Below are positions 2,615-37,038 of a DNA stretch of 64,000 bases, in pieces. The stretch is from the NCBI RefSeq assembly GCF_964188315.1, contig NC_135665.1, positions 11,346,001-11,410,000 of the forward strand, read 5' to 3'. Each line of letters opens with the position of its first letter. Position 1 is the stretch's first letter. Under the pieces are notes generated by a model. It worked only from the letters and a program-made list of their open reading frames with translations. It made no database searches and was not told the origin of the DNA. The translations under genes and the position numbers were made by a program. Source of the stretch: Podarcis muralis. Its lineage: Eukaryota.

Positions 2615-2644
2615 TCATACTGCGCCTTTCCGATTGCAGCTTTC
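2615..2644 (-). CDS. SEMA4D: SEMA4D alternative terminal exon D coding part (ESCNRKGAV*)
   Basis: cattcttatttag|GAAAGCTGC...TGA; phase 0 fits exon C. Confidence 0.8.
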   Translation of the reverse strand, partial: ESCNRKGAV

Positions 2645-5600
2645 CTAAATAAGAATGAATCGGGACAGAGAAAAAGCATTTTAATTCTCCCGTGCCACTA
2701 GTCTACATCAAACTTCGCTTTCTATGAACTTAGTAGTTAAATTACGAATCTCATTTTCCACTGATAATCGAGCTATCAACTGTATAATCAAGACTTTGCA
2801 CGTTCTCCATAATTTGCACTGCACTGTAATACCTTATTCAGCCTCATCGCTGTTTTCCAGTAAATTTCAGCCCAGCAGAACTGACGAAAACTGTCAGCAG
2901 TTCTGTTAATTCTGCTCAGAAAAGAGAGGCGTGGTGGAAAGAACAACTGAAGATTGGTATCTCACTGCTGTGTGCAAAGCAATAAAGCGCAGCTTAGGAA
3001 ATCTAAAATTTATCTTAAAAGGACGTCCATGAGAAAGTACAGATCCTCAATAAACTTTTCTGGGAAAGGTCTATCTTCCATAAAGCAGGGAAATTTGGAC
3101 TGGCTGCAGGCTTCAGTGCTTACCGTCTCATAAGCCTGGGGTATGGGGCCTTCCTGTTCAAGCATGGAGCAAGGCTCTAGCTGTGTTCTGAACTATGCAA
3201 TTTGTGAGAAGTAACAGTATGCCTTGAGGGGGCTGGTGCAGATGCCAGCTTCCTTTCTTGGGACTGCCTTGGTGTGTGTGATGCTTTTGGTCAAGAACAC
3301 CAGAGGCATGTAAGATCAGGCAGGAAGACTAGTGGGGAGCATTGCTTTAGCAGCTGTATGTGTCACTCTGATGGGTCTCGCATCTCAGCATGGCTGTGTA
3401 AGCAACCCCCCCCCCCATCATCTTTGATGTGTAATGAGCATATGACTCTAGCTATCGGAATCAAATGTGGCGATAAGAGGAAAGGGGGAAGTTGGTCTGC
3501 CAGGCTGCAACAAACCACTACCAAGAGATATGCTGGGTTTGATAGTCGCTGCGATCTCCAAACCATTGTGGGGCGCATGTGCGTGCATATTAACACTTTA
3601 TAGTCAGAGTGCAAAAATGCCAAGGATTTCTTCTCTTGGCCAGGTAACAGACCTCAAATGCAAAGCACCAAATTTCTCCAAACTGAGCAGCAAAATGTGG
3701 GTACGTGTTTGCCTGTTTCATACCACCTACCCAAGTTTTTTTCCAGCTCTCCATCCTTCTGTCATGCTCGCTGACGACGCTTCTCCAGTTAGCAAATTCC
3801 TTTGACCAGGTATCCTGGTAGCTGCTGCCTGCAAACAGTAAGCAATTAAATGACAAAGCTGGCACCTGTTAAGAATTCAAGCACTGGTTTCTTTAAAAAG
3901 ATCATTTCAAAGTGCCATAACTGGGACTTCCCTCCTAAACATTTGACCTTTTCCAATACTTAGCATACCCGAGTAGCAATTGTGAAAACCAAAACTTTCG
4001 TTCAGCACGGCAACATTTCAGGGAACGCACAAACAGGCACATAGCCCACCCCTGCAAATGGCAGTCACCTCTTGTGCAGCTTGCAAAACCTAAGAAGATG
4101 AATATGAGTTTCACATATAGAATGGATTGGGTGATAGTAAGAGCACATATATGGGACGCGGGTGGCACTGGGTTAAACCACAGAGCCTAGGGCTTGCCGA
4201 TCAGAAGGTCGGCGGTTCAAATCCCCGCAACGGGGTGAGCTCCCGTTGCTCAGTCCCTGCTCCTGCCAACCTAGCAGTTTGAAAGCACATCAAAGTGTAA
4301 GTAGATAAATAGGTACCCCTTTGGTGGGAAGGTAAACGGCGTTTTCGTGCGCTGCTCTGGTTTGCCAGAAGCGGCTTAGTCATGCTGGCCACATGACCCA
4401 GAAGCTGTACGCCTGCCCCCTCGGCCAATAAAGTGAGATGAGCACCACAACCTCAGAGTTGGTCTGGTGTCCCTTTACCCTCAAGAGCGTATATGCGTGG
4501 ACCAGTGTGTTTGCTTCTATTAAACTGCCCAGCATTAGGATTCCAGCTTTTCCCACAGTTCACAACCTCTGCTGCCTTCTATTGTGACTACAACCAATGA
4601 TTTGTGACAAAATGAGTCTGTGTTTTTAAGTGCCACTAACTTGTATCTCACAAAAGGGAGTGAATCAAAATAAAGAGGGATTCTTGCGCCTCTCTGGGTT
4701 AATGCCGCCTTTGTAGGTGACACCAGATCTGAAGTTCTGCCTGCTTAAATTTCCCAAAACACGTCACTCCTCGACGTCGCACCATTACCTTCAACAGTGA
4801 TGTAGGATATGGAGGTTTTGGTTCCAGCTTTGGAGATCACACGGCAGCAGTATTCCGAATCTTGCACTATAGCATCTTTCACCCAGCTTAGAAGATGCCG
4901 TCTTCCATCAGCCAGAGCCTGGGTCTGCTGGCTCACACACGCTTCCATTTTCTGCCCATTTTTCCCCCAAACAAAATATGCATCTCTGGGCCCTGTGGAA
5001 AATTGCAGTTGGCTAATTATTATGACAGATGGCACACGAAGTCCTTTTAAAGCAGGCATTGGGAACTGCAGGTGACGAGGCCTCACCTGGACTCCTCGTT
5101 TGGTCCATGAGGCCATTTTCTCCCAGACACACCCACCTACCATTCACCTGATGTCACATGATATACTACTACTACTGTCAGGGAACTGCCATCGGAGCTA
5201 GAGGCGGAGGGAAGGCTCCAGAGGGATGCTGGAGAGGGTCCCAGTAGGGAGAGAGGCAGCCCATCTACAGGGGAAGGAAATCAGCGTAACACCAGTGGAG
5301 AAGGGGGGCAGATGGGGGAATCGGAGAGGAGGCTCCAGGACTCTTCACCAGAGACCAGCGGAGAGAGTACGGGTACTCCGCTGCCCACACCCTCCCTGCG
5401 CAGGAGACTTCTGTGCAGGGAGAGTAGGAGGAGACTTGGCGTCAAAGAACTTTTATGCTGGAAAAGGTTCAAGAAACGCCCACTGACGGATTCTGCCAGC
5501 GACTGAGACAGCCACGAAGCTTGAGGCTGTCCAGACAGAAAGGGTTCAACCAGGTAACCTAGCCAGGAGTGGCGGCAACTTACACACGAGCAACCCCTAG

Positions 5601-8600
5601 AACCATTACAACTACTAATTAAATTTATATACCTCCCTATACCCAGGGGTCTCAGGGTGGTTCATAAAATAAAATCCATATATAAAACAACAAAATACGT
5701 AATAAAAATAGAAACAACAACCCAATAGCCCCCCCCCAAAAAAAAACACATTTTAAAAGGGCATAGGATGTCAACCAAAGGCCTGGTTAAAAAGGAACGT
5801 TCCCTGGGGAGAGCATTCAACAGACGGGGAGCCACTGCAGAGAAGGCCCTTTTTCATGTTGCCACCCTCCGGACCTCTAGAGAAGGCACACGAAGAAGGG
5901 CCTCAGAAGATGATCTCAGGGTCCAGGTAGGTTCATAAGGAAAGAGGCAGTTCTTGAGGTATTGCGGTCCTGAGCCATTTAAGGCCTTATAGGTCAAAAC
6001 CAGCACTTTGAATCGGGCCCAGAAACTAATTGGTAGCCAGTGCAGTCGGACCAGGATCAGTGTAATATGCTCAAACCGTCTTGCTCCGGTGAGCAACCTG
6101 GATGCTGAATTCTGCACTGGCTGAAGTTTCCGAACCGTCTTCAGAGGCAGCCCTTTGCAGTAATCTGACCATGAGGTCACCAGAGCATAGTCAACAGTAC
6201 TTAGGCTATCCCTGTCCAGTTAGGGGTGTAGCTGGGCCACCAGCCGAAGCTGATGGAAAGCACTCCGGGCTAATAATAATAATATAACAACTACTACTTT
6301 ATTATTTGTGCCCCACCCATCTGACTGGGTTGCTCCAGCCACTCTGGGCGGCTTCCAACACATACAAAAAGATAATAAAACATTGAACATTAAAAACTTC
6401 CCAATACAGGGTTGCCTCCAGATGTTTTCTAAAAGTTGTATAGTTCTTTATACATCTGATGGCAGGGCATTCCACAGGGTGGGCGCCACCACTAAGAAGG
6501 CCCTCTGCCTGGTTCCCTGTAACCTCACTTCTCGCAGTGAGGGAACCACCAGAAGGCCCTCGGCGCTGGACCTCAGTGTCTGGGCTGAACGATGGGGGTG
6601 GAGACGCTCCTTCAGGTATATATAGGCGCAAAGGAACAATGCTGACCCTTGGAGCACACTCCTGTTCGTTCTTTTGCAAGCATAGCTTGTGTTCACTGTC
6701 TTTTTCAACAGCTGTGGAACTTTTCCAACTCTCCCTAGGAAATGGAAATGGAAGCGTTTTGCACTTTAGCAAAAACACCCTTTTTTGAACCTGGAAACTC
6801 ATCTCTTTCTTCCTTTATAATGAGATGCAACACTTCTCCCTTCAAAGCACTGGTCTCTTTTCATGCACTCCTCTTTCATGTGATGCTTTTGGTCCAGCTT
6901 GTAAACATACTATCACGTTGCTGTGGCTAGCTATCCTTTTATTTGAGCCCTTTAACTGAGACCATGGCAAGGCCCATTCCGCAGGAGGAGAGCTGCCATG
7001 CTTGTGTCAATGAAGCACACTGCACAGATACATAGCAGAATGCCCTGACAACTTGGGAGTCACATGACTGCGTGTGATTCAAGTGTTGTCCGCCAACACA
7101 ATCTATGGCATTTGCAAGAAATCATGGAGAGAACTTCTCAGATCACATGACATGGAGCAGCAAAGTATCCGGAAGTGCTTTGAACACATAGGCCAAAGTA
7201 CTCTGTAAACTCCTGCCTAATTGCCCGTTTATAGCAGTAGGTGGAACAGGAAGCTATTGGGGAGATGTGTGCATATACAAGCAGAGGGTTAATACAATCT
7301 GCAGATTGGGGTGGGGGGAAGGGGGAAGAATATGAAGAAGATGCTGGACCAAATCCACCGCTCTGCAATTCTAAAGACACTATTATCTCAATATTATTTC
7401 CAAAACGTCAGTCTTCTTGGAAGCCGGTCAAAACGTATAATTCACACAACTCATTTTCCAAGCAGGCTACCCAAAAGAAACAATCTGTTCCGATATAGCC
7501 TGCAGATAACTTCGGCAACCTACAATCTTTTTGGTGGCTTCCCAATCGTGGACAGGCAATCTGGGGGGTGAGAGAGTAAGTGCTAGCTGCGCTGCTTTGC
7601 TCCTTTTCCCGTGATTGTCATTTCAACCTCAGTTATGACCTCAGTAATTGTAATCCACAATTAAACCGGCAGCCCCCGTTTGGATCGCAAGGGTCTCTAC
7701 AGTCTGTCAAGGAAACAAACAAAACATTTTGAATACTTACGTTCCACTTTATCTCCTCCTCCTGGATGCTTGAAGGATCAAAGAAGTCAAAAGTTATAGG
7801 GTGTGTCAATTAAAAGGCACACAAAATAATTAGTACATTGGGATCGATAAGAAGGTATTGAGAAGAATATATGCTGTCAGAATTTTATTTTTTGAAAGTA
7901 CAGGAATGCACAAAAGGAAAGGAAGAAATAACCTATCTGGAACTCGGAGACTTTGTAAGTGTGTTTTCCAGAGTTTTGCAGGACAGGCACCTTCTCTATA
8001 AAAAAGGCCGGCCTATAGCTATTTCCACATGGAATCAGTATCTGACCCAGGAGACAGCTGCCTCAGTGTAAAATTCTATGCAGCTCTGGTGAAAAACAAA
8101 GAATTCAAGTGAGTTTGGCCACTTGGTGACTCACTACTAAGAGCTTTCTATCAGGGTTCTGAGTCCATCTTCCACAATATTGTCTACACTGACTGATGGT
8201 GGCTCCCTGGGATTTCGGACACGTTGCCTCTCTCTGCCCAAGGACTGAACTTGGGAGCTTTTGCATGCAAAGAAGATGCTCTACAGCGGAACGACAACTC
8301 TTCCTCAGGCATAGCCCCCATAAGGAACCCCCACACAGATGCAATTTGGATTTGCAAACCTGCGCACAAGATTAAATCCCATTGGTCACAATGGGACATA
8401 CCGCTGAGTAGATTTGTATAGGATTATGTTACATTTCTTCCATTCGCTCAAGGCTCTTAATGCAATTATATTTTGCAAGTACACAGCCCCCTACTTATCA
8501 GATTTATCATCCTGTTTGCTATTATTCACACAGCGCCATCAACGTAATTGGCATTTCACAAAGCCTCCTAAGTGGGGGAAAGGGGTAGCTGACATGATTC

Positions 8601-11600
8601 ACTCCCTGCCTCCCTTGGTTGAACACTACTTGAGTGTCTGTGCTGTTAAGGCACATTGGGGAAAGGTTCCTCCTCCCTAGGGGTAAACCCTAGGTGCAGG
8701 TGGTGCTGTGGTCTAAACCACTGAGCCTCTTGGGCTTGCCAATCAGAAGGTTGGCGGTTGGAATCTGCACAATGGGGTGAGCTCCTATTGTCTGTCCCAG
8801 CTTCTGCCAACCTAACAGTTCTAAAGCACACCAGTGCAAGTAGATAAATAGGTGGCAGGAAGGTAAACGGCATTTCCATGCGCTCTGGTTTCTGTCATGG
8901 TGTCCCATTGTGCCAGAAGCTACTGTTAGATCCATCTTGAGACCGCTGCCATGGATACCAGCAGCCTTCAAGCAAGCAAACTTGCCTTATTATCGCTCCC
9001 TAGCATCCCACTGCCAGAGGATTGCCTCCTTCCATTCACCACTTTGTCTCCTCCAAGCGGAAGAAACCGGGGCAGTGCTGAATATCACATCCATTGCCAG
9101 GTGTGTCCTGCTGGAAATAAAAAAGGGCTTTCCCCTTGGCCTGCCTTTATATCCACTCAGCTTCCAAGTGCTTTTGTGACATCACAAGAAACCCACAGCC
9201 AATGGCAACAGCTGGGGAGGCATCATCTTCATTGCTTTGAGCCTCACAATGGCAAGAGGACCTATCAGTGATTGTGTGCTTGTTTATTAAGGAAGTGGGT
9301 GGAGCTCTGGTCTAAAGCACTGAGCCTCTTGGGCTTCCCAATCAGAAGGTTGGCGGTTTGAATCAGTGTGACGGGGTGAGCTCGCTTTGCTCTGTCCCAG
9401 CTCCTGCCAACCTAGCAGTCTGAAAGTACGCCAGTGCAAGTAGATAAATAGATGCCGCTGTGGCAGGAAGGTAAATGGTGTTTCCGTGCACTCTGGTTTC
9501 TGTCACGGTGTCCCATTGTGCCAAAAGCAGTTTAGTCATGCTGGTCACATGACCTGGAAAGCTGTCTGCAGACAAATGCTGGCTCCCTCGGCCTGAAAGA
9601 GAGATGAGCGCCGCAACCCCATAGTCCCCTTGGACTTGAGAGCACACCTTGCTGGCATTACAGGACAGACGTTCCTTTCTCTGCAAGAGTAACAACCCTG
9701 GGAAATCAGACTTCTAAAACACATGTGGAGCCTACAAAAGTGTTCACCCTCCAACCACTGGAGGGGTCAGGTAAGAGCACTCCTCTCCTCTCTCTCTTCC
9801 ACTTGATGCTAATTGTGTGGTGAAGGCAGCACAAAAAAAACAGCCTCTCTGTGGCAGACGCTCTCTGTTGGGCCTGTGATGTTTGAAAGTATTCACCAGG
9901 TGACTCACCCACCCCTGTACACAGTTCCAGGCACATCTGGTATTGCTATGTTTCATCTTGTAACATGATGCAGGTGAGCACTTTAGGATGTTCCAGGCCA
10001 GGTCAGAATGCCAGTTCCAGGAAAAGATGTCTTTAGTGGCATCTCTGTTGTACCTATTTTCTCCCTCCACCCCACATCACCCCCTTTAAAGGAACACTAT
10101 TAAAACCAGCCCCATTGTTGCAGGGCATGGCACTTTCTCTAGCTGAAGCTCTGGCAATATGGCTGGGGGAGGAGAAAGAGACTCAGGCTAAGGAGACTTG
10201 TGTACAGTCGTTCCAGCTCTGTTCTGGAAGTCCGTTCAACTTCCAAAATGTTCGGAAACCAAAGCACGGCTTCTGATTGGCTGCAGGAAGCTCCAGAAGC
10301 CAACCGGAAGCTGCAGGGGCCCCACTGGACATTCATCTTCCAAAAATAGTTCAGAAACCGGAACAGTCACTTCTGGGTTTGCGGTTTTGGGAGCCAAAAC
10401 ATTCTGGAACTAAGCTGTTCAGAAACCAAGGTACAATTGTACTTGTGGCTGCTGCCACAAGTCCTTTGTGTGCCACAGCTCACCAACTAGACAAGAGACC
10501 TGCCAAGTAGATTCTCTCCCCCAGACCCATTTGCCACCTTCATGCGACTGCAAAACATTCCTTTGGAGGTGCTGAGGAAAGCACACTCTAGCAAGCTAAC
10601 CTACATGGTGAACCAGTGGACATTAATTTCTTGGGAGTCGCCACCAAAGCCCAGTAGCCTCCGCCACTGCACAGCACAAAGCTGTCCTTAGAAGAGAGAA
10701 CCAATTCACACAACCAAGTTCCCCCCCCAGGTGGTGAATTTCCTCCCACCTGCTGCTGCTAGGCTGACTTGGATTTTGGAAGCCTCAGAAATGTCAAGGT
10801 TCATGGAGAACTTTGAATTCCATGTGGATCCAAGTCTAGGGAGACTGAAAAATAAATTAATGAATGACTGCGTGTTGGGGTAACTGGTTAAACCTGTGTA
10901 TTGTTCCAGGAATCCAAGAAGGCTTGCGGAATACTGAATGCTTGAAGATTATCTACTTCCTGCTACTATTGGGTAATAGTCAATATCAGTTGTACCCACA
11001 GCAGACCTGTTGAAAACAATGCCCTTAATTTCAAATATTTTCAGAGGGTCTACTCTGAGTTTAACTAACGGTATTTATTATTATGATTCATATAAAAAGC
11101 TTCCTTGGGTTAGTAATAACACTGGACTCAGCAGAAGTGCAGATGAATGAGCCTTCTGCTGTAAAACTCCATGTTTCCAGAAAGTAACTCCTCTTGCCAA
11201 AACAAACCCAGCTAAGGTAATATCAAATCACCTAACGAAAGCTTTTCAAGTCAGAATAAACCAAGAGGCGGCCAACGCCATCCTTCAAATTAATTTACTG
11301 CCTGTCCTATTTCTGGAGCTAATCTTAGATGAGGTCTCCCTGAAGGTCGCTGAAAATGAGATTATCAAGGATGGAAATCAAGTAGAGAGATGTGAGTAGC
11401 GGCGAAGTACGACTGCCAGGTAAGCTGCCAGGAAGAATAAAGAGCTTAGAGAATTGCTGTTGGGCTGCGGAAATCTTCAATTGGGTACCAATTCAGTGAC
11501 ATTAGCTGTGATCACCATTCTGGTGGCACACAAAGGAACATAGGGGCCAGACCAATGGTCCACAGAGCTCAGCGTTGTCTAAAATGACCGTCAGCGGCTA

Positions 11601-14600
11601 TCCAAGGTTTCTCCTGGTCCTACCTGGAGACTGAATGTGGGGTCTTCTGTAAGTGCCATCCCCCAGAGCTATAGCCCCTCCACATGTCAAAACGGAAGAC
11701 ATTTGGGCCAACCTAATAAAAATGCGTCAGGTTCCACTGGTGCTTATCACAGTCCATCAGGGGAAATAATTGAACCAAGACTACCCTATCGCCAATTCCT
11801 AATAAAGTTGTCAACAGCAAGAGATTTTAATAACAACTATCTGTCCGTCTGTTGATGTATTATATATTTTGTTTTCTGTCACAAAGGAAATCTGCTAGAC
11901 GGAGGCTCCAGAAGCATGAAAAGTGCGTATGTGACCACAGTAAAATTTAATCTCGGAAACGAATGCAACATCTGGCACAATTCCCCCATGTTGAGCTTTG
12001 CTGTGAGCTGAACGCGTAAGGATTTGAAACGCTATAACTTTGAAGATCCTTTCATGCAAAGCAAGCATTTGCTATGGCTTCTTGTCGCCCAGGCAGGAGG
12101 GAGAACTGGCAAGCCATGGCAGATCCCTTAAGTGGTGGGCAGGAAGTGTTTTCCCTGTGATCCTGCAAAGGCATGCCCATATCCAGGTGATGTTTGGGAT
12201 AATTCATGCAATTGCAGGATAGGCTGCAAGCTGCTGTTCAGAAACCCAGGGAAAGAACTAGAAGGAAGAAATCAGGACCCAAGTTTTTTTAAAGAGAGAC
12301 TGCAATACCTGAATACCTGTATACCTGAGTCCTGTATACCTGAAGGAGCGTCTCCACCCCCATCGTTCAGCCCGGACACTGAGATCCAGCGCCAAGGGCC
12401 TTCTGGCGGTTCCCTCATTGCGAGAAGTGAGGCTACAGGGAACCAGACAGAGAGCCTTCTCGGTAGTGGCGCCCGCCCTGTGGAACGCCCTCCCATCAGA
12501 TGTCAAAGAGATAAATAATTACCTGACATTCAGAAGACATCTTAAGGCAGCCCTGTTCAGGGAAGTTTTTAATATGTAATGCTGTACTGTTTTTAACACC
12601 GATTGGGAGCCGCCCAGAGTGGCTGGGGAAACTCAGCCAGATGGGCGGGGTATAAATAATAAATTATTATTATTATTATATTATGCAATCTCTCTTTAAA
12701 CGTTTTAAAGGGAAACGTATTAAAGGGAAACGTTTTAAAGGGAAATATTTTAAACTCTCGTTCAGGAAACCCTGCGACTCCGTGGGGAAGAGATGCACAA
12801 GCAAACATCCTAATGAACTGGCACAGGAGGCTCTGTGCCTGGCCATGGCTTGAGATAACTGAGGAACATTAAGGGGCTTCTGCCGTGTCAGCTCCTGCCA
12901 AATCCAGCACGAGGGGGAGATGGCCTGTGGTCCGCGCTGGATTTCTAATGAGAGATTCTTGGACTCGAGCTTCCCTGGCTGCCCACCTCCAGATGTGCGA
13001 TGACAGTCTCGGATTGCCGAGCGGGGAGGAAAACACTTTGCACAGCAGATGCTTGCCGGCCGTTTATTGCGCAGGAAATAATGAATGAGCCCAGGCATTA
13101 AAAATAGGCTTTGGCCTTGGTCTGTGTGGAATCAGGCACTGGACGAGATTGTATCTCTTTGAGGTAGAACATGGCCAGTATTTCCAGTACAGTGGTACCT
13201 CGGGTTACATACGCTTCAGGTTACATAGGCTTCAGGTTACAGACTCCGCTAACCCAGAAATAGTGCTTCAGGTTAAGAACTTTGCTTCAGGGTGAGAACA
13301 GAAATCGTGCTCCGGTGGCGCAGCAGCAGCGGGAGGCCCCATTAGCTAAAGTGGTGCTTCAGGTTAAGAACAGTTTCAGGTTAAGAACGGACTTCCGGAA
13401 CGAATTAAGTTCTTAACCCGAGGTACCACTGTACTAACTTGCTTGTTCTTTTTTTGCTGTTGCAGTTCTGCTGCTGCTCCCCACCCTCCTGATGAACAGC
13501 GAGCAGGTCCTTTCGCAGAGTGAGGAACTGTGGGTATCGTATTTCAGAGACTGCCTTGTGAATGCCATCACCATCGTGAGCTGCCACAGTGGGGAAACAC
13601 GCTCTCTTCCAGATCCTGCACTCAGAATTCCTCACTCTGTGGAAGGGCCACCTCGGTCCCTCCTCATTGAGGAGGTGGGGTGTGTGTGTGTGTGTGTGGC
13701 AGAGACCCTTGCCTTGCTGGATAGCTGAAGGCACCAGAAAAAGGTGGAACTGGAGGCTAACAATGAGGCGAGCAAAGGGGTCAAACTTGCTGCCCACGGC
13801 CAAAGACAATGGTATCGTTCTGTGGACCCAGGCTCCCTTGTGCCCTTGGCGAAGAGCTGTATTGGCACCTCCAAAGCCGGGAGAGACCATGTTTCCTTTT
13901 GTGCTCCACCAGTGACTTCCTCTGCAGCCATTGGGGTTGGGTCTGCTCTGCCCTTCCTCCCCATCTCCTTCGTCAGTCCATCCGTCTGTCTGCTAAACTC
14001 CCTCCCTCTGCTGGCTGCTTTCCCTTCTGCCTCCATCCTCCCTCCCTTTTTCCTCTTCCTGCTACTCTTGCCCTCTCTTGCCCTCCACCCACACTTCTAA
14101 TAGTACCACTGGCCCACTGGGGAGGGGGCCCCACAGGGCTGCTGCGATGGCCAACACCAGCGACTGGATTCCATCACCAAGGCACCCAGAGAAGACTATG
14201 TGCCTTGCCCAGCCTCCCAGAGCAGCAGAGTGGCCTGGGGAGCTTGTGGACGTGCTCCTGGCCACTCTTAAGATCTTTTCACCCTTGGCAGGGGCCAACC
14301 TACCCGGCCCCTAGGTATGCCCTTGAATCTGCATTCCGATTGGGCCAGTCCTGGCCACCTTCTTCCAAATGGTTATTTATATTCCATGTCAGAAGGTTCC
14401 TTCTCTCCAGGAAGTCTATATTTAGAGAAAGAAAAAGAACCAGATAACATGGAATTGGAGGTATGCAAGGCCCACACCAGACCTACAGAGCCTTGATTTT
14501 TACAAGAAATGCCACAAGTCCACTATTTTGTCCATCTCACATTCCTAAGAGCAAGAGTTGCAACATCAGATTCTTACACCAGTTCAATGAATCCAGAATT

Positions 14601-17600
14601 CACAATCCTAGACAGGGACTGAAATGACGACTCCACACAAAGAAGCGAGAGAAAAAATGATCAGAGAAGTGGATTTAGGGGCTAAATTCTCTTTTGAGTC
14701 ATCTGCCTTACGAGCTGAAACTGATAATTAAAACAGTACGGAAGAGCTTTCTTGAAAACCAGGCAAAGTCAAGAAGTGACTAGTGTGAAGTCTAGGTCAC
14801 TTGTACCTGCTGAAAAGTATAGTGGTACCTCAGGTTACATACGCTTCAGGCTACATACGCTTCAGGTTACAGACTCTGCTAACCCAGAAATAGTGCTTCA
14901 GGTTAAGAACTTCAGGATGAGAACAGAAATCGTGCTCCGGCGGCACGGCAGCAGCAGGAGGCCCCATTAGCTAAAGTGGTGCTTCAGGTTAAGAACAGTT
15001 TCAGGTTAAGAACGGACCTCCGGAACGAATGAAGTACTTAACCCGAGGTACCGCTGTAGTTTTGTTTTGTTTTAAGGTGCATTTCACAGGATGAGAAAAG
15101 CTTATGGCTACATTTCTGCAAGGAGGAAGACGGCCCCATCAGCAAGTTTCAGACCATGCAGAAGTTCCATTTTAATCTCTGCCTCTTGCTATCCTTTTCG
15201 GAATTTTGGCTGAGAATCCTAGCTGATACTGTGTATTCTGAGTAACACCCTATCTTAAAAGAAACAAAATGAAAAAGTAACCTGATTTTGCACAGTGAGC
15301 TACTTTGTTCAATTGCTTGTTATTCTGCAAAAAGTAAAGGAGGAATCAGATCTCTCTTGACGATAAGCTGCTTTGTGAATGTTATAAACCACAAGCAAGC
15401 CGGGAAGAGTTGCCACAGCCTCGTTCAGGAATGTGAAACTGCACAGATAAATCAGGATAAGAAAACACAAGACTTGAGAAGCAAAGAACTCCGCTGGATC
15501 AGATGAAACATCCACCCACAGCCAGCTGCTGCTTCTGGAAGTGTGGAGAGATGGAGGCTAGAAGCTTCCTCCATTTCTTCCCTAGCAACTGATATTTAAG
15601 GGCTTGCTGTACCCTCAGAGGACGCCACTGCTTATTTCCTTCCACTGTGAAGACTCTTTAACTCTTCCCTTGTGTTTCCAGTTCTTTTGATCAATTACTG
15701 ACTTATAACAGGCGTCTGACGTCTTGTCCAAGGTCTGCCAGACTTACTCAGGAGCCTCTATTGAGGGACTTTATCAAAAGCTCGTTTGAAGTCTGTGGAT
15801 ATGGTATCTACTGAATTACCTGCATCTACACATGCTTGGGGGGGACGCGGGTGGCGCTGTGGGTTAAACTACAGAGCCTAGGACTTGCCAATCAGAAGGT
15901 CAGCGGTTCGAATCCCCGCGACAGGGTGAGCTCCCGTTGTTCGGTCCCTGCTCCTGCCCACCTAGCAGTTTGAAAGAGCATCCTGCCCACCTAGCAGTTT
16001 GAAAGTAGATAAATAGGTACCACTCCAGCGGGAAGGTAAACGGCGTTTCCGTGCGCTGCTCTGGTTCGCCAGAAGCGACTTAGTCATGCTGGCCACATGA
16101 CCCGGAAGCTGTACGCCAGCTCCATCGGCCAATAAAGCGGCGTGAGCACCGCAAGCCCAGAGTCGTCCACGACTGGACCTAATGGTCAGGGGTCCCTTTA
16201 CCTTTACACATGCTTGATGCTCTCATAGAAATCCAATGGTTGAAGAGGCAGAACTTCCTCATGCAGAAGTTACTCCAGTTCTTTTTCAGAAGTCTGCTTT
16301 CCCAACTCCTCATCCTGACTTACCCCCAAGAACCTGAAAAAGTAGTCTTAAATTGCATACCTTCCAATCTGTGGCAGAGACTGATTTTACTGTCAAACTG
16401 AATTATTATTAGAATCTAGTTCTCCAAGGACTCTTTGCTATCTGGGTTTAGAGATTAGTTTTTTAGCCAGTCCACTGGACCAGGTTTTGGGGGTCCCTCA
16501 GACAAGTCTATGCAGCCTTTCTCCCTTCAGTTTGCCATTGCTAATGTCTGCTCACTCGCCCAGACAACTAGCTGGTAGACAAGGCGTAGTGAGGAAAATG
16601 AGTGTCTGTCACAGATGCTTCCCAATCAACACACTTTGATTTTATTTTTGCTTTCTTACACTTTTACCCATCTTCTTGTTGTTTTTTACGCTGACGTTAA
16701 TTCTCAATGCAAATCATTTTGGAAAGAAAGGCAGGATGCAAACACTTCAAATAAAATAAAATAAAAACCTTAGTTGTTTTTATGCATGGGTTTATAAATA
16801 AAATGTGTATCATGCTCTTTGACCTCAAGGTTCAACAACAGTTGGGACTTGCTGACATCTTGTTGTATGTTAAGAGCAAGAACGCTGCAACAGCTGGTGG
16901 CAGAAAATGTGCCCGTTTAGACTTATCTAATCCTTCATTAAACAAATTCACTTAAAATGTAGTTTTGAACAGAGTCTGAACAAGTTTATGGAGGAAATCA
17001 GAATTTAAGAGCAAGTTTAGATGTTGCATTTCTCAATTCACGTCGGCAATGCAGGCTGTCAGCCTGTGCTTGGTGTTTATGCCTGCATTGTGCCTACACG
17101 AAGGAAGCCCTGCTCCTCTTCTCTGGCTTTTGTAGTCACAGCAGCTGGAGAAAGCACTCAGAAAAGTCTGAAATTGCCGTAGTATCTTAACGCGTCCTTG
17201 GCATACTTCTGAAATTGTGCTGCTTCAGAGCAAGACTGGATGTGTATCCTAAGCTACATTTTGCAATTCTTAAAGTTGTGAAATCCAGCTGATGAAGCAA
17301 GGGTTTTTGTTCTTCTAAACGAGACCTTGTAGAAATAATTAACTAGATCTCTGGGAAGACAGGGGAGGGGAGGAGAAATACTTTTATTATCAGAAGGGGG
17401 AAGAAGGGAAGTACCAACGAAGCAAAGTTGTACCAAACTAAACATAGTACAAAAGCACATCTGATATTTGACGTCAATGGGCCAATTTCAGTACAGTGGT
17501 ACCTTGGGTTACATACACTTCAGGTTACAGACGCTTCAGGTTACAGACTCCGCTAACCCAGAAATAGTACCTCGGGTTAAGAACTTTGCTTCAGGATGAG

Positions 17601-20600
17601 AACAGAAATTGTGCTCCGGCGGCGCAGCGGCAGCAGGAGGCCCCATTAGCTAAAGTGGTGCTTCAGGTTAAGAACAGTTTCAGGTTACGAACGGACCTCC
17701 GGAATGAATTAAGTATTTAACCCGTGGTACCGCTGTACTGAAATTGGCCCATTGACGTCAAATATCAGATGTGCTTTTGTACTATGTTTAGTTTGGTACA
17801 ACTTTGGTACCGATCGAAAGGTCGGCGGTTCGAATCCCCGCGGCGGGGTGCGCTCCCGTTGCTCGGTCCCAGCGCCTGCCAACCTAGCAGTTCGAAAGCA
17901 CCCCCGGGTGCAAGTAGATAAATAGGGACCGCTTACTAGCGGGAAGGTAAACGGCGTTCCGTGTGCTGCGCTGGCTCGCCAGATGCAGCTTGTCACGCTA
18001 GCCACGTGACCCGGAAGTGTCTGCGGACAGCGCTGGCCCCCGGCCTCTTGAGTGAGATGGGCGCACAACCCTAGAGTCTGTCAAGACTGGCCCGTACGGG
18101 CAGGGGTACCTTTACCTTTACCTTTACCGCTGTACTGTATCTACAAACTGAATCACAAGAAGGAGAATAGCATAGATAAGATGTTTCTTGCCGTGCAGAT
18201 GCAGAAAAGAGTGTGATCCACACAATATTCAACATTCCCATTGCCCAAGATAAGACTCACACAACCTACTTCCTTTGGTGTGATAGAATCTACAGGTGTT
18301 TAAAAAAAATATTTTTAGTAGAGTGTATTATTTTAACTTCCCTTGTGCAACGTCTCAACCCTTGCACAGTCATGAGTTTGCTAGACCCTTAAAAATGTAG
18401 TATAAACACCAACAATTAGGAAACACTTGCCTGCGAGCGCTCCAGTTGGAGAACAGCCTTTTCCAAAAGTGCCATGGGCTTTGAAAACACTCAAACTCAG
18501 GATGCAAGGGAGAAACGTGCTAAGAGGAAGGCACGCTTGGCAAATCCACACCGTGATCAACTCCCGCCCGGAAACCAGTGTCCCCACTGTGGAAGGACGT
18601 GTGGATCCAGAATTGGCCTCCACAGTCACTTACAGACTCATTGTTAAAACCGTGTTTATGGAAGGCAATCTTACTCAGCTACGAGTGATCGCCAAAGAAG
18701 AGGAGACCCTGGAAAATCCAGGAAAAGGTGAACCAGGCCGTGGAGAGTCCTGACTTGGGGAAACATCTAACGATTCTAACCATTCTGCAATACCAGTTCC
18801 ACACACACCATTACACATAGAAAGCATCAAGCAGAACTTCAACAATAGTGTCCATATGCTTATATTGTAGCAGGAAGTGGTAATATGATTGAATCACCAT
18901 GAGCAAGCAAACAACTGCAAATAGAACCTGGGAGGAGACAAGAAGCAGCATTACGTTTGTAATCTGATCAGCTGGATAACCAGCAGGACTAAGTCATGGC
19001 GGCACCTGATGATCTATAATAAATCACATTAAGCAGCCCAAGGGCAGTTCTTACCAATGTACTTATGGTGCTAAGCCCTTTGGCCTAATTAGAAGACACA
19101 CAACAGCTACAGGGATGCAACATTTTATTTATTTCATCAGCTTGGTATATTAAGAGCAAGCCGAGTTATGGGATAAATCTTCAACACAGATTCCAAGGTC
19201 ACAAGCAAGATGAATATAGAAATGGCAGAAAATTTCATTTAATGAGATTGGAGTTTGAAGGGACAAGAGGTCATGTTGTTCAGCAATGGAATTGTACATT
19301 CTATTCATTTAAAGAATTTGGTTTTATAGCTTTGTTTGGATTGCCATGTTCCAAAATTCTGATTTGTATTCCAAGCAAACAAAGGAAAATCACCTAAACC
19401 AGTGTTTCCCAAACTTGGATCTCCAGCTGTTTTCAGACTACAATTCTCATCATTCCTGATCACAGGTCTTGCTAGCTAGGGATGACGGGAGTTGGTGGTG
19501 AAAGAATGGTGAGATGGTTTACTTGGAAATTGCATACCTATCCTGAAAAGTGTAGATCTGAAGAACTGTTAAATAAAGAGCTGGATTATTTAAAGAACCA
19601 AAACTAAAGATCATATCCCACCAACCCATGATTTTTTTAAACACAGATCGGGAGACATACATCAACACAGCATTGATTCCTAGATGGAAAACCAGTGCTT
19701 TAGCCTTAATATGGTTAACTCCAGCAGACAATATTTGACATAAGCCAGTTTATTAAAATTGTGAGTACAGTGGACCCTCCAGATATGAACTTAATTCGTT
19801 CCAGGGGTCAGTTCGCACCCCGAAAATTATGTAAATAGAGGCGTGCTTCTGCACATACACACACGGCAAAACCTGGACGTAAACACTTCCGGGTTTGCCA
19901 TGGCCGTAACCCGAAGATTCTGTATCCAGAGGGATACGTAAGTAGAGGTCAGACTGTACTTGTAAATACAAAATTCCTGAAAAAGACGCTCTCAAATATA
20001 CAGCACAAATAAACCAAAGTTTGGCAATATTTTTTGATCTGGAAAATGTTTCTGAAATGTCATTAAAGTTGCGGTAATGCTCCTATTTCCTGTAGCCACG
20101 TACGAAGGAAAAGACATTGGGGACTGATTCTAATGACTGACGTAAGAGAAGTTGTTACAAGGGCTGATTTTAAACCTTGTGTGCACAACCTGCGTAAAGG
20201 ATGCGTAAGGCCCTTCCAAGCCGACAACACTGATTTCTGCTGCCTGGGGAGACCCTACGCCCTCATTTTTTGCCACCAAACAATGCTGCCTGTGATGGGA
20301 GGAAGGACCGCAGTTTCCCACCCTCAACACAAACCTTTTTGACGCCCTGACCTCTCTTGCCATTTGACTCCCTGGGCTCGTGCACAAAAGAAGTTAAAGC
20401 AAATGCGATTTGGTGAATGCAACCTGCAGGAATGGGTAACAGCATCCTCCGACTTACCCGTAGCTTGGCAGAAGAGGAAGAAGGTGGTCTGGGCACCCAC
20501 GTGCCGGATCTGGTCACTTAGGAACGGTGGCATCAAGGTGACTGTGGCCAAATCTGCGCTAGACCAAACATCGGGCTGGGGACTGATGGATGGAGGACGT

Positions 20601-23600
20601 GAGTCACTTTCCATACAGGACAAAGAGGAGGAACCAGTAGGAGGGAAAGTTATGGGAGATGAAGCTGTGGCAGAGGAGGACAGAAAAGGAAAAAGAAGAA
20701 GAAAAGGGCACTAAGGAAAAAAGTTCTAAGAACATGCCAAAGAAATAGTTTGCAAAGGAGGGGGGAAATGAGCAGTGAACATTTAATCAAAAGAAAGTTC
20801 CTTCTTATTTCTGTTTTGAAATACAGGAAATCACACCTGTTCAAATCTTACAGCGAGAAAACCCTCTAAAGCTTCTGGGTTTTTTTTAAGACAAGTTATT
20901 ATTGCTCAAGGACAAGGATGAAATACAATGAACTTCAATATTTATTTCCTTATTTTTTTCATATATACAGAATCAAAAATAGAAAAATAAAAGCAAAAAT
21001 GAACCATACAAAATCTAGAACAGTTTACACTAAGACCATCTAAGGTGTGTGCTGGGGAAATATTTCAACAGGAACAAAGAAAAGGACTTTGGGACATGTT
21101 GCCTACTCAGTCGTCTCTATTTCTAACCATATTTACATGAGACACAAAAGACAGCGAGAGACAAGGATTTTTAAAAACTGTACAGCACAAAGGAGTTTTA
21201 CAGACAAATAGTGCCGTTGTTGAGTCCCAGGAGAGATAAAGTGGTCGACCCTTTGGGCAGTTTTCTGCTCTTCTCTGGTTTCTTTTCTCCAGTTGCCTTT
21301 TTGGAAAACATTGGTGGAAGTTGTGAAGAAACAGTGAAAATATTTGGCAAAGTTGATTATGGGGGTGAGAGAGGCTGGAGCCCTATTGCTTCCCAAACTG
21401 TGGGGGAAAGTTACAAAATGCATGACATCCTCAACAGTCTCTTTTGAGAGGTCCATTGCATGTTTGCCAAGGTCCGCATTGTATCTCTGAAACAGAAGCC
21501 TCTCACACTGCTGCGGTTCAGTGACTACTGTTTGTCCACAATAATCCACTTTTTAAAACCTTAAAACAATTCCATAAAATCAGTTAATGTGGCAGTGTCC
21601 AACTACATCTTTTTAACATCTTTTTTCTAAAGCTAAACTCCCCACAACCCAAAAATGAACATTAAGCTCTCAAAATGATTACCATATCAACGCCTCTTAA
21701 AAAAAAAGGGGGGGGGGGAGAGAGACAATTAACCGAAGCTTATCCCTGAGAACCTTATGCAACTCTAGAATACATCATATTCTAAAAAGGTACACAAACA
21801 GTTTTGGAAAGATCCAACATTTCTTTCACCAGCTAAAACTACCAGACAAATGCATTAAAATCACTAGATGCAAAGAAATGTCCCAATCTGGACAAAAAGG
21901 CTATTATTTACCAATCTGATAAACTAAACATCATTTCCAATTTGGAATTAAACTGAAATTAGATTTTTAATGGCAGTTAAATACGTGCAGGCAGGAGCTA
22001 CTGAAATCCTTTTTGGTATGACTCTGCAACAAGAGTTAATTTTACCTTCTATGAAAAAGAGGGATTAATCAAAATAGTCAGTATGCGCAAGTGTTAAATT
22101 ATCCTTGGCTGGGGAGCAGGGGGAGGGCAGCTTAGAAGCTCACCGTGTGAAACCGTAACTGGCCATTTAAAATAAAGAAGAAACACATAAGAAATAAGTG
22201 TGTAACAGAACCGTTTTCAGAAAATGCGAGATCTCTCTCTGCTCTATCCAGGTGTGAAATGACACTTTTTTTAAGTGTCACTTAAAAAAAGCTGAGAACA
22301 CGTAGCCCTTTCTGGCCCAGTTATCACATCTAAAATGTTTTATGTTCGAAAACAAATGGTTCAGAATGACAGTACTTTCATTAGGGGAGGTGGGGTTTTT
22401 CTCCTTTAATCCCCCTCAGCATCCGAGTCAGCAAATTTCAGTTCGCACTTGACATCAAAAGGTTTGTCCTTGACTTCCTTGTAAGACTGCGAATGGTCCT
22501 CATCGTGTTGAACATGGCCGTTTCCATAGTCTGCTTCAGTCTCGTATCCCGTGTCATGTGCCGGTTTTGGGTGCTCCCCGCTTTGGGTCAGGAGACTGCC
22601 TGGCTCCACCAGGGTCTCCTTCACGCTTTGCTCACAGTCAGAGAAATCGGCCTTGGGCTTCTTCTTCCCAAGCAACATAGCAGAACGAAACTTCAGGCAC
22701 TGGTCCGGCAGAAACCCTTTGTAACAGTTGTAGGCAAACAGGCACAGGAAGAGCACGAAAAAGAAGAGGAAGAGGAACATCAAGAGGGAGTTATCGTTGG
22801 ACCTCAGAAACATGGTCTTTGCAGAGACCTCGGGGGGCGAGTTCAAGAGCTCGACGTCAGGTGCGGTGCTCATGAGGGTGGGGACAATGGGATTCGTCAC
22901 TATCCTGGACGTTGTGACTGGTACCACCGGGGAGGTGGACATGTGAGCGGCCGAGTCTTGGATTGCGACAGTTGGCATTTTGGCTGCTTCCGCGTTGCGT
23001 TCTGTCGGTGTGGTTGGCTGGGTGGGGCTCAGCGTGGTGTGCTGGACTTTCCTCAGTTCCAAAACATGCTTCGCCAACACTTGCGAGAACTTCTGGTTCT
23101 TCACTTTTTCTTCCGACAGGCACTGATAGACGCCGCTGTCGCCCTCGGACAAATTGAAGATCAGCAGCGCCTTCTCCAGCAGCCGGTACTTCGGACTTTC
23201 CACCTTGAGCACATCGTCCTTGAATTTCCAAACCACCTGGGCCAGGTTGGACTTCTGAGAGCATTTTAGCTCTGCAGTGCTGCCATGCTTGAAAGTGTGC
23301 TGCAGATAATGCTCTCTTACTTTATCTGGAACAGCAAAATAAATGTAAACGAGAACAGAAATGAGTTTTCTTTTCGGTGTGGGGAGCAGGCCAATTCAGC
23401 CATGCAGGCATATACTGGGGAAAAACTACCAGCTCACAACACGTGTCACGCTAGCCTGAAACAACAACACAGGGTACAGCTTACAATGGATATGTATTTG
23501 TCTAGGATAAAGTGGTGGCATTCCTAAGTATCTCTGGAACTGCTTGCTAAACTGCTGCATTCCAAAGATGGAGAAATCTGTGCGATTAGCGTATGATTTG

Positions 23601-26600: not shown

Positions 26601-26856
26601 CCTAGTCCCCTAGTACAGTGGTACCTTGGGTTAAGTACTTAATTCATTCCGGAGGTCCGTACTTAACCTGCAACTGTTCTTAACCTGAAGCACCACTTTA
26701 GCTAATGGGGCCTCCTACTGCTGCTGCGCCGCCGGAGCACAATTTCTGTTCTCATCCTGAAGCAAAGTTCTTAACCTGAAGCACTATTTCTGGGTAAGCG
26801 GAGTCTGTAACCTGAAGCGTATGTAACCTGAAGCGTATGTAACCTGAGGTACCGCT

Positions 26857-26889
<33 letters not shown>

Positions 26890-36991: not shown

Positions 36992-37038
<47 letters not shown>

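What the first reader, a model, noticed from the sequence alone, without database searches (positions are those of the whole stretch)
2615..23325. Conserved alternative 3' module swaps Ig+TM+tail for a different Ig and a secreted end
Seen: after the 47-nt exon 13 (phase 1), splicing can go to the 920-nt TM exon or to exons A-D. A-D encode a second Ig fold split across a 15.5-kb intron (FLFCQATG|GP..FVW..EYCC) and contain no hydrophobic TM stretch. From memory this matches human SEMA4D isoform 2 (C9orf164-derived), which is little studied; soluble SEMA4D is normally attributed to protease shedding. Intact frames and splice sites in a lizard suggest an amniote-conserved, genetically encoded soluble SEMA4D under purifying selection (inference).
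Basis: partly seen in the sequence, partly recalled or inferred. Interest (0 to 1): 0.75.

Follow-up and report, generated by a model that had tools for sequence, protein, structure and literature searches.

The report
Lizard copy of SEMA4D isoform-2 ending
This lizard's SEMA4D gene can swap its membrane-anchoring last exon for four downstream exons that encode a different Ig domain and a tryptophan-rich helix with no membrane anchor; the variant is real, expressed and conserved in all land vertebrates, but it is already catalogued as human SEMA4D isoform 2.

Summary
On the minus strand, the 47-nt phase-1 exon (25828..25782) is followed either by the canonical Ig+TM+tail exon (23325..22404) or by four exons: A 20664..20458, B 4992..4789, C 3828..3731 and D 2644..2615. 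All have open frames, AG/GT sites and phases 1-1-1-0, and none has a hydrophobic stretch.

RNA-seq of the same species shows the 25782>20664 junction (4 reads in one run, against 3 canonical). A transcript contig joins exon 13 directly to exon B, skipping A in frame.

The module is 93-97% identical to Podarcis 'semaphorin-4D isoform X2'. It is annotated in frogs, turtles, crocodilians, birds, marsupials and placentals. Human UniProt Q92854-2 ('semaphorin-4D isoform 2 precursor', 738 aa) shares a 90%-identity cluster with a gorilla protein that carries it. Mouse isoforms 3 and 4 carry it too.

Lizard-versus-snake dN/dS is 0.20 for A-C and 0.07 for the canonical exon.

A model built on the Podarcis orthologue gives a disordered Ser/Pro linker, an I-set Ig domain and a 39-residue helix with a 4-3 Trp/hydrophobic repeat and an invariant Cys.

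Secretion and oligomerisation are inferred. Homology of the tail to the cholinesterase WAT peptide is not supported.

Verdict: real, functional-looking, already annotated, and uncharacterised in the papers I could search.

The parts
25782..25828 (-). 47-nt exon (last 15 codons of the PSI region), ends in phase 1; shared donor for both 3' choices
   Evidence: Joints from 25782 to 23325 and to 20664. tblastn of Podarcis P0104 residues 535-551.
22404..23325 (-). Canonical terminal exon, coding part: semaphorin-type Ig, stalk, TM segment, cytoplasmic tail, stop
   Evidence: translation. Pfam ig E 8.7e-7. KD19 maximum 2.94. Joint 25782>23325 in all four runs. 82.6% identical to snake, omega 0.07.
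20925..22403 (-). Canonical 3' UTR, ending about 260 nt upstream of exon A; AATAAA at 20946..20941
   Evidence: RNA depth and contig ends at about 20924-20953. Sequence. Conserved with snake as one 3-kb block that runs on through exon A.
20458..20664 (-). Alternative exon A (207 nt, phase 1 to 1): conserved Ser/Pro-rich linker with a Cys, then Ig strands A-B with the first Ig cysteine (..FLFCQAT)
   Evidence: Joint 25782>20664 with GT..AG, 4 reads with 4 starts in X23. 66/68 identical to Podarcis lilfordi isoform X2. Snake orthologue with AG/GT, omega 0.35.
4993..20457 (-). 15,465-nt intron that splits the alternative Ig domain; holds SINE-like repeats and is not alignable to snake outside repeats
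4789..4992 (-). Alternative exon B (204 nt, phase 1 to 1): Ig strands C-G with the core Trp (FVW) and second Ig cysteine (EYCC)
   Evidence: Weak I-set hit, E 0.058. phmmer gave 32 hits at E<=1e-10. Conservation with snake is limited to the exon, 5005..4782, omega 0.115. X9 contig joins 25782 to 4992.
3731..3828 (-). Alternative exon C (98 nt, phase 1 to 0): Trp-rich amphipathic helix ([16 protein letters not shown])
   Evidence: 32/32 identical to Podarcis raffonei and P. muralis X3. Helix 139-177 in the model of the Podarcis orthologue. Omega 0.12.
2615..2644 (-). Alternative exon D, coding part: ESCNRKGAV + stop, carrying the Cys that is invariant in 37 tetrapod sequences
   Evidence: C173 invariant. 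9/9 identical to Podarcis lilfordi.
2245..2614 (-). Presumed 3' UTR of the alternative transcript; candidate ATTAAA at 2270..2265 (not verified by reads)
   Evidence: Sequence only.

Best explanation
This is the lacertid orthologue of the alternative 3' module that defines human SEMA4D isoform 2 (UniProt Q92854-2) and mouse isoforms 3 and 4.

The donor of the 47-nt phase-1 exon has two options. It can pair with the acceptor of the canonical terminal exon at 23325, giving Ig + TM + cytoplasmic tail, with polyadenylation near 20925. Or transcription reads through that poly(A) site and the donor pairs with the strong acceptor of exon A at 20664, 260 nt further on, followed by exons B, C and D.

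The second route replaces the semaphorin-type Ig, stalk, TM and tail with four elements: a conserved Ser/Pro-rich linker, an unrelated I-set Ig domain split by a 15.5-kb intron, a 39-residue amphipathic helix with a 4-3 Trp/hydrophobic repeat, and an invariant Cys six residues from the end. The product has the signal peptide and the Sema-PSI receptor-binding part but no membrane anchor. It is therefore predicted to be a genetically encoded soluble SEMA4D.

I infer that the helix plus Cys hold the ligand as a covalent oligomer (at least a dimer), which semaphorin signalling requires.

Shown here: the exon structure, the exon 13>A and exon 13>B junctions in RNA, orthology, purifying selection, and the absence of a TM segment. 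Predicted from a model: the I-set fold and the helix. Inferred: secretion, oligomerisation through the tail, and regulation by competition between splicing and polyadenylation.
For: Structure:
- Frames, phases and AG/GT sites are all as described.
- The whole SEMA4D coding region, 51434..2615, lies on the same strand.

Expression:
- The library is stranded and places the RNA on the minus strand.
- Joint 20664/25782 with CT..AC (GT..AG on the minus strand) has 4 reads with 4 starts in X23. The canonical joint has 3 reads in X23 and 3 in X24.
- An 808-nt contig of X9 continues from 25782 into letters that map uniquely to 4962-4991, which is the start of exon B.
- Canonical transcripts end at about 20924-20953, next to AATAAA at 20946..20941.

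Orthology:
- Identity to Podarcis lilfordi 'semaphorin-4D isoform X2' is A 66/68, B 63/67, C 30/32, D 9/9.
- Full-length isoforms of about 725-745 aa carrying the module are named semaphorin-4D in frogs, turtles, crocodilians, squamates, birds, marsupials and placentals.
- Human Q92854-2 / 'isoform 2 precursor' and mouse NP_001365249-53 are among them.

Selection:
- Snake locus L001 keeps exons A-C with their splice sites.
- NG86 omega is 0.35, 0.115 and 0.12 for A, B and C, and 0.20 from summed counts. Synonymous versus non-synonymous differences give Fisher p = 1.5e-13.
- Nucleotide similarity to snake is confined to exon B +/- 10 nt in that region.
- In the 37-sequence alignment, the Ig residues C66, W78 and C119 and the tail residues W152, H159, W166 and C173 are invariant.

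Fold:
- The AF2 model has mean pLDDT 79, with the Ig at residues 43-137 above 90 and a helix at 139-177.
- The best unbiased structural matches are I-set domains: MuSK Ig3 Z 13.2 (rmsd 1.6 over 90 residues), DSCAM, LRIG3 and titin.
- Pfam I-set scores above its cut-off in three orthologues.

No TM: the KD19 maximum is 0.69 in the module against 2.94 in the canonical exon.
Against: - Junction support is thin: 4 reads in one of two bulk RNA-seq runs and none in the other.
- The junctions 20458>4992, 4789>3828 and 3731>2644 were not examined in reads, because only one read-laying run of at most 6 kb was allowed. For this species they rest on the exon 13>B contig and on annotated isoforms of close relatives.
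- The exon-A-skipped form lacks half of the Ig domain, so part of the output may be non-functional.
- dS between lizard and snake is about 1.1 and near saturation, so omega is approximate.
- No protein-level evidence exists for secretion, folding or oligomerisation. An exposed aromatic helix could instead cause ER retention unless a partner is present.
- No paper in the searchable library describes the isoform's function.
Confidence: 0.85

Rival explanations
1. Exons A-D belong to a separate small gene downstream of SEMA4D (a 'C9orf164'-type locus) with its own promoter. The link to SEMA4D would then be occasional read-through splicing.
For: - Several genome annotations call the module a separate 'uncharacterized protein LOC...': snake Ahaetulla XP_058022118, elephant, lynx.
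- Peromyscus has a 183-aa 'semaphorin-4D isoform X4' that is the module alone with its own Met.
- X9 holds a 408-nt contig that runs unspliced across the exon A acceptor, 20885-20489.
Against: - Exon A starts in phase 1 without a start codon and is in frame only when joined to exon 13.
- Direct 25782>20664 and 25782>4992 junctions exist.
- More than 200 protein clusters, including curated human and mouse RefSeq records, carry Sema-PSI plus the module.
- The stand-alone models begin with unconserved, intron-derived residues.
Confidence: 0.04
2. The alternative junctions are splicing noise, or a non-productive by-product of poly(A) read-through, with no protein function.
For: - Read counts are low, and the alternative junction is absent from run X24.
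- An exon-A-skipped form would break the Ig domain.
- No functional literature was found.
Against: - Frames and splice sites are intact from frogs to mammals.
- Omega is 0.20 with p = 1.5e-13.
- The structural Cys and Trp residues are invariant.
- The Ig model is confident.
- The stop codon lies in the last exon, so the mRNA is not an NMD target.
Confidence: 0.04
3. The product is not freely soluble. The Trp-rich helix plus Cys would act like the cholinesterase WAT peptide, wrapping as a four-helix bundle around a proline-rich partner (PRiMA/ColQ-like or scavenged polyproline peptides). That would tether or tetramerise SEMA4D and cause ER retention when the partner is missing.
For: - Another first-stage note (s1-152519) made this suggestion.
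- The pattern is W1 F5 W8 I12 H15 M19 W22 W26 followed by ESC near the C-terminus, a 4-3 aromatic repeat on a predicted helix.
- Pfam AChE_tetra is the family most often hit by the tails: 2 of 37, best E 0.066.
Against: - There was no AChE_tetra hit at E<=10 for the 21 tails listed individually, at E<=10 for ten longer module-bearing proteins, or at E<=1 for the window's exon C.
- A profile of 37 tails finds no cholinesterase chain in the PDB at E<=10.
- The third heptad Trp is His, and an extra heptad is present.
- The hydrophobic moment is only marginal: 5% of shuffles reach it.
- A simple two-chain coiled coil with a disulfide explains the same pattern.
Confidence: 0.12

Closest known systems
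Human SEMA4D isoform 2 (UniProt Q92854-2, RefSeq 'semaphorin-4D isoform 2 precursor', 738 aa); mouse isoforms 3 and 4 (NP_001365249-53); NCBI 'semaphorin-4D isoform X2/X3/X4' of other tetrapods
   Same: Same gene, same branch point after the PSI-end exon, and the same four-exon module (linker, Ig, Trp-rich helix, C-terminal Cys). The window is 93-97% identical to Podarcis isoform X2 and about 50% identical to the mammalian and frog modules.
   Different: Only species-level differences. The C-terminus reads CNRKGAV instead of CNKKxxx or CSKDxx. The internal donor that gives the roughly 840-aa 'both Ig' isoform in Sceloporus, Rhineura, birds and rodents is absent here.
Proteolytically shed soluble SEMA4D (sCD100)
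   Same: Both would deliver the Sema-PSI receptor-binding part without a membrane anchor (established knowledge for shedding; inference for the isoform).
   Different: Shed SEMA4D keeps the canonical Ig and part of the stalk and is made post-translationally. Here the canonical Ig is replaced by an unrelated Ig (no alignment at E<=100) plus a helix, and the choice is made at RNA processing.
Class 3 semaphorins (secreted: Sema-PSI-Ig-basic C-terminus with an inter-chain Cys)
   Same: The overall architecture matches, as does the idea of a C-terminal Cys stabilising the dimer (established knowledge for class 3; inference here).
   Different: The alternative Ig gets no Pfam Ig_SEMA-3_4_7A hit, and the roughly 730-aa isoforms lack PF28354 in their precomputed domains. 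No furin-type basic tail was seen. The module is not a member of that class.
Membrane/secreted switch of immunoglobulin heavy chains (competition between a poly(A) site and splicing to downstream exons)
   Same: One gene makes an anchored or a secreted protein by choosing between a proximal terminal exon with its poly(A) site and distal exons (established knowledge for the Ig mu chain). Here the distal acceptor lies 260 nt beyond the canonical AATAAA.
   Different: The polarity is reversed: the proximal choice is the membrane form. Regulation was not studied here.
Cholinesterase T peptide / WAT domain (Pfam PF08674)
   Same: Both are alternative C-terminal exon products of about 40 residues. 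Both form an amphipathic helix with aromatic residues in a 4-3 repeat and have a Cys a few residues from the end (PMC8518539).
   Different: Sequence-profile tests do not support homology. One heptad position is His, not Trp. The helix is one heptad longer and is encoded by two exons.

Membership tests
SEMA4D isoform-2-type alternative C-terminal module | Lies downstream of the canonical terminal exon of SEMA4D on the same strand | tested here: met
   Podarcis SEMA4D isoform X2 maps colinearly to 51434..3731 on the minus strand. The module exons lie at 20664..2615, below the canonical exon at 23325..22404.
SEMA4D isoform-2-type alternative C-terminal module | Spliced in frame from the phase-1 exon that ends the PSI region | tested here: met
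   Joint 25782>20664 has 4 reads with GT..AG. A contig joins 25782>4992. Phases checked.
SEMA4D isoform-2-type alternative C-terminal module | Sequence orthology to the annotated isoform, including human Q92854-2 | tested here: met
   93-100% identity per exon to Podarcis X2 and X3. The module is found in named semaphorin-4D isoforms across tetrapods. Human isoform 2 sits in the 90% cluster of gorilla P0205, which carries the module.
SEMA4D isoform-2-type alternative C-terminal module | No transmembrane segment or GPI-type hydrophobic end | tested here: met
   KD 19-residue maximum is 0.69 (A), 0.54 (B) and -0.91 (C), against 2.94 in the canonical exon. The C-terminus ESCNRKGAV is hydrophilic.
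SEMA4D isoform-2-type alternative C-terminal module | Product is secreted | not testable with these tools
   Needs expression of the cDNA or proteomics.
Immunoglobulin I-set domain (PF07679) | Profile match above Pfam's cut-off | tested here: inconclusive
Exon B alone scores 13.9 bits, below the 23.7 cut-off. Orthologues P0021, P0026 and P0001 score 25.3, 27.0 and 24.5 bits.
Immunoglobulin I-set domain (PF07679) | I-set beta-sandwich fold with the Cys-Trp-Cys core | tested here: met
   In the model of the Podarcis orthologue the Ig has pLDDT above 90. VIA-align gives Z 12-13 with rmsd 1.5-2.2 to MuSK Ig3, DSCAM, LRIG3 and titin I-set domains. C66, W78 and C119 are invariant. Foldseek's top C1-set hits have rmsd about 4.
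Cholinesterase WAT / AChE_tetra (PF08674) | Profile match to PF08674 | tested here: not met
   No hit for the window's exon C at E<=1. No hit at E<=10 for ten module-bearing proteins or for the 21 tails listed individually. Only 2 of 37 tails hit, best E 0.066.
Cholinesterase WAT / AChE_tetra (PF08674) | Three Trp at seven-residue spacing on an amphiphilic helix, with a Cys near the C-terminus | tested here: inconclusive
   W1, W8 and W22 are in register but position 15 is an invariant His. The Cys is invariant. The helix is predicted. The hydrophobic moment of 0.36 is reached by 5% of shuffles.
Cholinesterase WAT / AChE_tetra (PF08674) | [quoted passage not shown] | not testable with these tools
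   Needs co-expression or a multimer structure.
Class 3 (secreted) semaphorins | Semaphorin-type Ig (PF28354) followed by a basic furin-processed tail | tested here: not met
   No PF28354 hit on the alternative Ig. The roughly 730-aa isoforms list only Sema and PSI (+/- I-set), whereas the roughly 840-aa forms that keep the canonical Ig do list PF28354.

The most novel reading that the evidence does not exclude
The invariant Trp/His/Trp/Cys helix that ends isoform 2 may be a functional analogue, possibly an ancient relative, of the cholinesterase WAT peptide. It would assemble SEMA4D into disulfide-locked tetramers around a proline-rich partner. That partner could anchor the 'soluble' ligand to membranes or matrix, or control its exit from the ER. 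SEMA4D would then be the first non-cholinesterase client of that assembly system.
Probability: 0.1. Interest if true: 0.8.

Novelty: already known. Interest (0 to 1): 0.35.

Why it matters
Soluble SEMA4D (sCD100) is a biomarker and a drug target, and it is routinely explained by protease shedding.

The data here show that a second, genetically encoded anchor-less SEMA4D has been kept for about 350 million years. It has its own Ig domain and an invariant Trp-rich helix plus Cys. It is under purifying selection and is expressed in a lizard at a level comparable to the canonical junction in one sample.

None of this is new as annotation: human isoform 2 and mouse isoforms 3 and 4 are curated. But the depth of conservation, the three recurrent architectures and the coiled-coil-like tail give concrete reasons, and concrete reagents, to test whether part of 'soluble SEMA4D' is this isoform. 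They also allow a test of whether antibodies and assays aimed at the canonical Ig and stalk miss it.

Tried and rejected
- **Tandem-duplicate origin of the alternative Ig.** Rejected: BLASTP finds nothing (exon B versus the canonical exon, E 31; Podarcis alternative Ig versus the window's canonical Ig, no alignment at E<=100).
- **C1-set (beta2-microglobulin / MHC-like) Ig.** Suggested by weak C1-set and CL-kappa hits and by Foldseek's top list. Rejected in favour of I-set, because the search that does not rely on Foldseek gives I-set domains at Z 12-13 with rmsd 1.5-2.2, Pfam I-set passes its cut-off in orthologues, and the domain is split over two exons.
- **WAT homology.** Not supported. 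A profile-profile test could not be run because no tool supplied cholinesterase T-peptide sequences, and I did not type them from memory.
- **DNA of the closest relatives for dN/dS.** The look-up of encoding contigs has no record of Podarcis isoform X2, since only the longest product per gene is indexed. I used the snake locus instead.
- **The roughly 840-aa architecture in this lizard.** No phase-1 GT exists in the equivalent stretch, where the window reads GAACGCAAC. No such joint was listed.
- **Literature.** Six searches found no paper on the isoform's function. One paper only lists both human RefSeq mRNAs as PCR targets.
- **Fish.** No named fish protein appeared. This is not evidence of absence.
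- **ORF listing of the whole window** was uninformative.

Full report
**What is there**

The window holds a complete SEMA4D gene on the minus strand. tblastn of Podarcis lilfordi 'semaphorin-4D isoform X2' (P0104) maps colinearly from 51434 down to 3731.

The 47-nt exon 25828..25782 encodes [15 protein letters not shown] and ends in phase 1. Two continuations are open.

The first is the canonical terminal exon, 23325..22404. It encodes a semaphorin-type Ig (Pfam ig, E 8.7e-7), a stalk, a TM segment (19-residue hydropathy maximum 2.94) and the conserved cytoplasmic tail.

The second is four exons:

| Exon | Coordinates | Length |
|---|---|---|
| A | 20664..20458 | 207 nt |
| B | 4992..4789 | 204 nt |
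| C | 3828..3731 | 98 nt |
| D | 2644..2615 | ESCNRKGAV + stop |

All four have AG/GT boundaries, phases 1-1-1-0 and no internal stop. The A/B intron is 15,465 nt and cuts the Ig domain between the first cysteine and the core tryptophan. The maximum hydropathy in A-C is 0.69.

**How I handled the spliced model**

Each exon was translated and searched by reference on its own. Analyses that need the whole module (alignment, fold, tail profile) used database proteins, with the closest relative P0104:551-729 as the lead sequence. For dN/dS I summed per-exon counts.

I fetched no human contig. Human proteins appear only as names in cluster listings.

**Expression**

One run search and one read-laying run were allowed. 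I searched for runs with window:2240-5000. I then laid two raw bulk RNA-seq runs of the same species label (X23, X24) and two contig sets (X9, X1) on window:20300-25900.

- The library is stranded and places the RNA on the minus strand.
- The canonical joint 25782>23325 has 3 reads in X23, 3 in X24, and contigs in X9 and X1.
- The alternative joint 25782>20664 (GT..AG) has 4 reads with 4 different starts in X23 and none in X24.
- Canonical transcripts end at about 20924-20953, next to AATAAA at 20946..20941. Exon A, with a long pyrimidine tract before its AG, therefore lies 260 nt beyond the canonical poly(A) site.
- An 808-nt X9 contig leaves exon 13 at 25782 and continues with 30 letters that map uniquely to 4962-4991, the start of exon B. 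Exon A (69 codons) is thus skipped in frame in some transcripts.
- The junctions further downstream were not examined in reads.

**Relatives**

phmmer with exon B against 1.84 billion representative proteins gave 32 hits at E<=1e-10. Most were short, mis-called fragments that nevertheless contain exons A-D.

Cluster look-ups named snake, bird, Xenopus, rodent and other mammal sources. They also gave a full-length Xenopus 'semaphorin-4D isoform X2'.

I then used full-length database proteins with the search restricted to the module:

- About 20 frog species, plus turtles, crocodilians, two lizards (Hemicordylus, Tiliqua) and a bird (Rhea).
- More than 12 squamates, more turtles and crocodilians, many more birds, marsupials, ruminants and colugo.
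- 196 placental clusters.

The window is closest to lacertids: Podarcis lilfordi A 66/68, B 63/67, C 30/32, D 9/9, followed by Zootoca. It is identical to none of them.

The gorilla 738-aa protein that carries the module shares a 90% cluster with 'Isoform 2 of Semaphorin-4D, Homo sapiens, Q92854-2 / semaphorin-4D isoform 2 precursor'. Mouse NP_001365249-53 are 'isoform 3/4 precursor'.

Three architectures recur:

1. Exon 13>A-B-C-D, about 730 aa.
2. Exon 13>B-C-D, about 660 aa (Podarcis X3, Lithobates X3). This matches the X9 contig.
3. Canonical Ig plus the start of the stalk, then A-D, about 840 aa (Bombina, Sceloporus, Rhineura, birds, rodents). This form uses an internal donor after ..TRTE, and that donor is missing in this window.

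**Selection**

The snake locus L001 (Ahaetulla) contains the canonical exon and exons A, B and C, with AG/GT sites conserved and a 10-kb A/B intron.

| Region | Nei-Gojobori omega (lizard vs snake) |
|---|---|
| Exon A | 0.35 |
| Exon B | 0.115 |
| Exon C | 0.12 |
| A-C, summed counts | 0.20 |
| Canonical exon | 0.07 |

For A-C, dN is 0.23 and dS is 1.13. The excess of synonymous change gives Fisher p = 1.5e-13. dS is close to saturation, so the value is approximate.

At the DNA level, only exon B +/- 10 nt aligns in its region. The introns align only at SINE-like repeats. The canonical exon, its 3' UTR and exon A align as one 3-kb block.

In a 37-sequence tetrapod alignment, the Ig residues C66, W78 and C119 and the tail residues W152, H159, W166 and C173 are invariant. 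Mean pairwise identity is similar for the linker (0.57), the Ig (0.61) and the tail (0.52).

**Fold**

AlphaFold2 on the Podarcis module with that alignment gives three parts: a disordered residue 1-37, a confident beta-sandwich at 43-137 (pLDDT above 90), and one helix at 139-177.

Foldseek ranks C1-set domains first, with rmsd about 4. The exhaustive aligner ranks I-set domains first: MuSK Ig3 at Z 13.2 with rmsd 1.6 over 90 residues, then DSCAM, LRIG3 and titin. Pfam I-set passes its cut-off in three orthologues. I conclude it is an I-set domain.

The alternative Ig shows no detectable similarity to the canonical SEMA4D Ig.

**The tail**

The hydrophobic positions of the helix are W1, F5, W8, I12, H15, M19, W22 and W26, followed by ESC. 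This is a 4-3 repeat, as in coiled coils.

Another first-stage note (s1-152519) likened it to the cholinesterase WAT peptide. I tested this in three ways:

- Pfam AChE_tetra hits only 2 of 37 tails (best E 0.066). None of the 21 tails listed individually was hit, and neither was the window's exon C.
- A profile of the tails finds no cholinesterase chain in the PDB at E<=10.
- The hydrophobic moment is marginal.

The resemblance is one of pattern, not demonstrated homology.

**How it most likely works**

*Shown:* alternative use of a proximal terminal exon or of distal exons that start just beyond the proximal poly(A) site.

*Inferred:* the distal choice yields a signal-peptide-bearing Sema-PSI ligand without an anchor, which would be a secreted SEMA4D. 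Its new Ig and its helix plus invariant Cys would keep it oligomeric, as semaphorin signalling requires.

The rivals are weak. A separate gene is contradicted by phase, junctions and more than 200 annotated isoforms. Splicing noise is contradicted by conservation and omega. A WAT-like tethered or partner-dependent form remains possible at about 10%.

**Novelty**

Already known as annotation (human isoform 2, mouse isoforms 3 and 4, and NCBI X-isoforms). Six literature searches found no functional study. One paper merely lists both human RefSeq mRNAs as PCR targets.

- Direct junction evidence in a lacertid.
- Tetrapod-wide rather than amniote-wide conservation.
- Omega estimates.
- The recurrent exon-A-skipped and 'both Ig' forms.
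- The I-set assignment.
- A description of the invariant tail.

Noticed in passing
window 25782 joined to 4992 (run X9 contig): A transcript contig joins exon 13 directly to exon B, skipping exon A in frame. The product would lack the linker and the first half of the alternative Ig. The same form is annotated as isoform X3 in Podarcis and Lithobates.
   Followed up: partly
window about 23010-23020 (canonical exon, ..PTTPTER..): Other squamates, birds and rodents use an internal phase-1 donor here (after ..TRTE) to make a roughly 840-aa isoform with both Ig domains. That donor is absent in this window, which reads GAACGCAAC. No phase-1 GT exists between codons 85 and 135 of the exon.
   Followed up: yes
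window 23369..20441 versus L001 494..3372: The canonical SEMA4D 3' UTR is conserved with snake at about 71% over 3 kb, without a break, up to and through exon A. This is unusually high for a UTR at this evolutionary distance.
   Followed up: no
window 4192-4402, 8734-8825, 9333-9425, 15884-15975, 17813-18119: Copies of one SINE-like repeat in the A/B and B/C introns. All match the same element in the snake intron (L001 5970-6277).
   Followed up: no
window 21699-21720: Reads and contigs end here with runs of A (loose ends in X9 and X24). This could be a proximal poly(A) site about 700 nt after the canonical stop, or internal priming at an A-rich tract.
   Followed up: no
L001 (Ahaetulla) and P0111 (Pantherophis) tails: In snakes the otherwise near-invariant tail is altered: ..QHEKLLENWKNTLDSC.. 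replaces ..EHDKMMxxWKKTWESC... The snake gene model also reads through the exon C donor. This may reflect relaxed constraint on the tail in snakes.
   Followed up: partly
P0001, P0012, P0173/P0174, P0026 (database proteins): Several genome annotations split the module off as an 'uncharacterized LOC' gene (snake, elephant, lynx) or mislabel it ('LRIG1' in pangolin). Peromyscus has a module-only 183-aa 'semaphorin-4D isoform X4'.
   Followed up: partly
window 20489-20885 (run X9 contig record 8): A 408-nt low-depth contig runs unspliced across the exon A acceptor. It could be retained intron or read-through RNA, or a transcript that starts downstream of the canonical poly(A) site.
   Followed up: no
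alignment A1, columns 1-25: The predicted disordered linker begins with a strongly conserved proline-rich motif (ASSPIPFPPxGxSxLSC). Its Cys is present in amniotes but is Ser or Phe in frogs. Such conservation is unexpected for a mere spacer.
   Followed up: no
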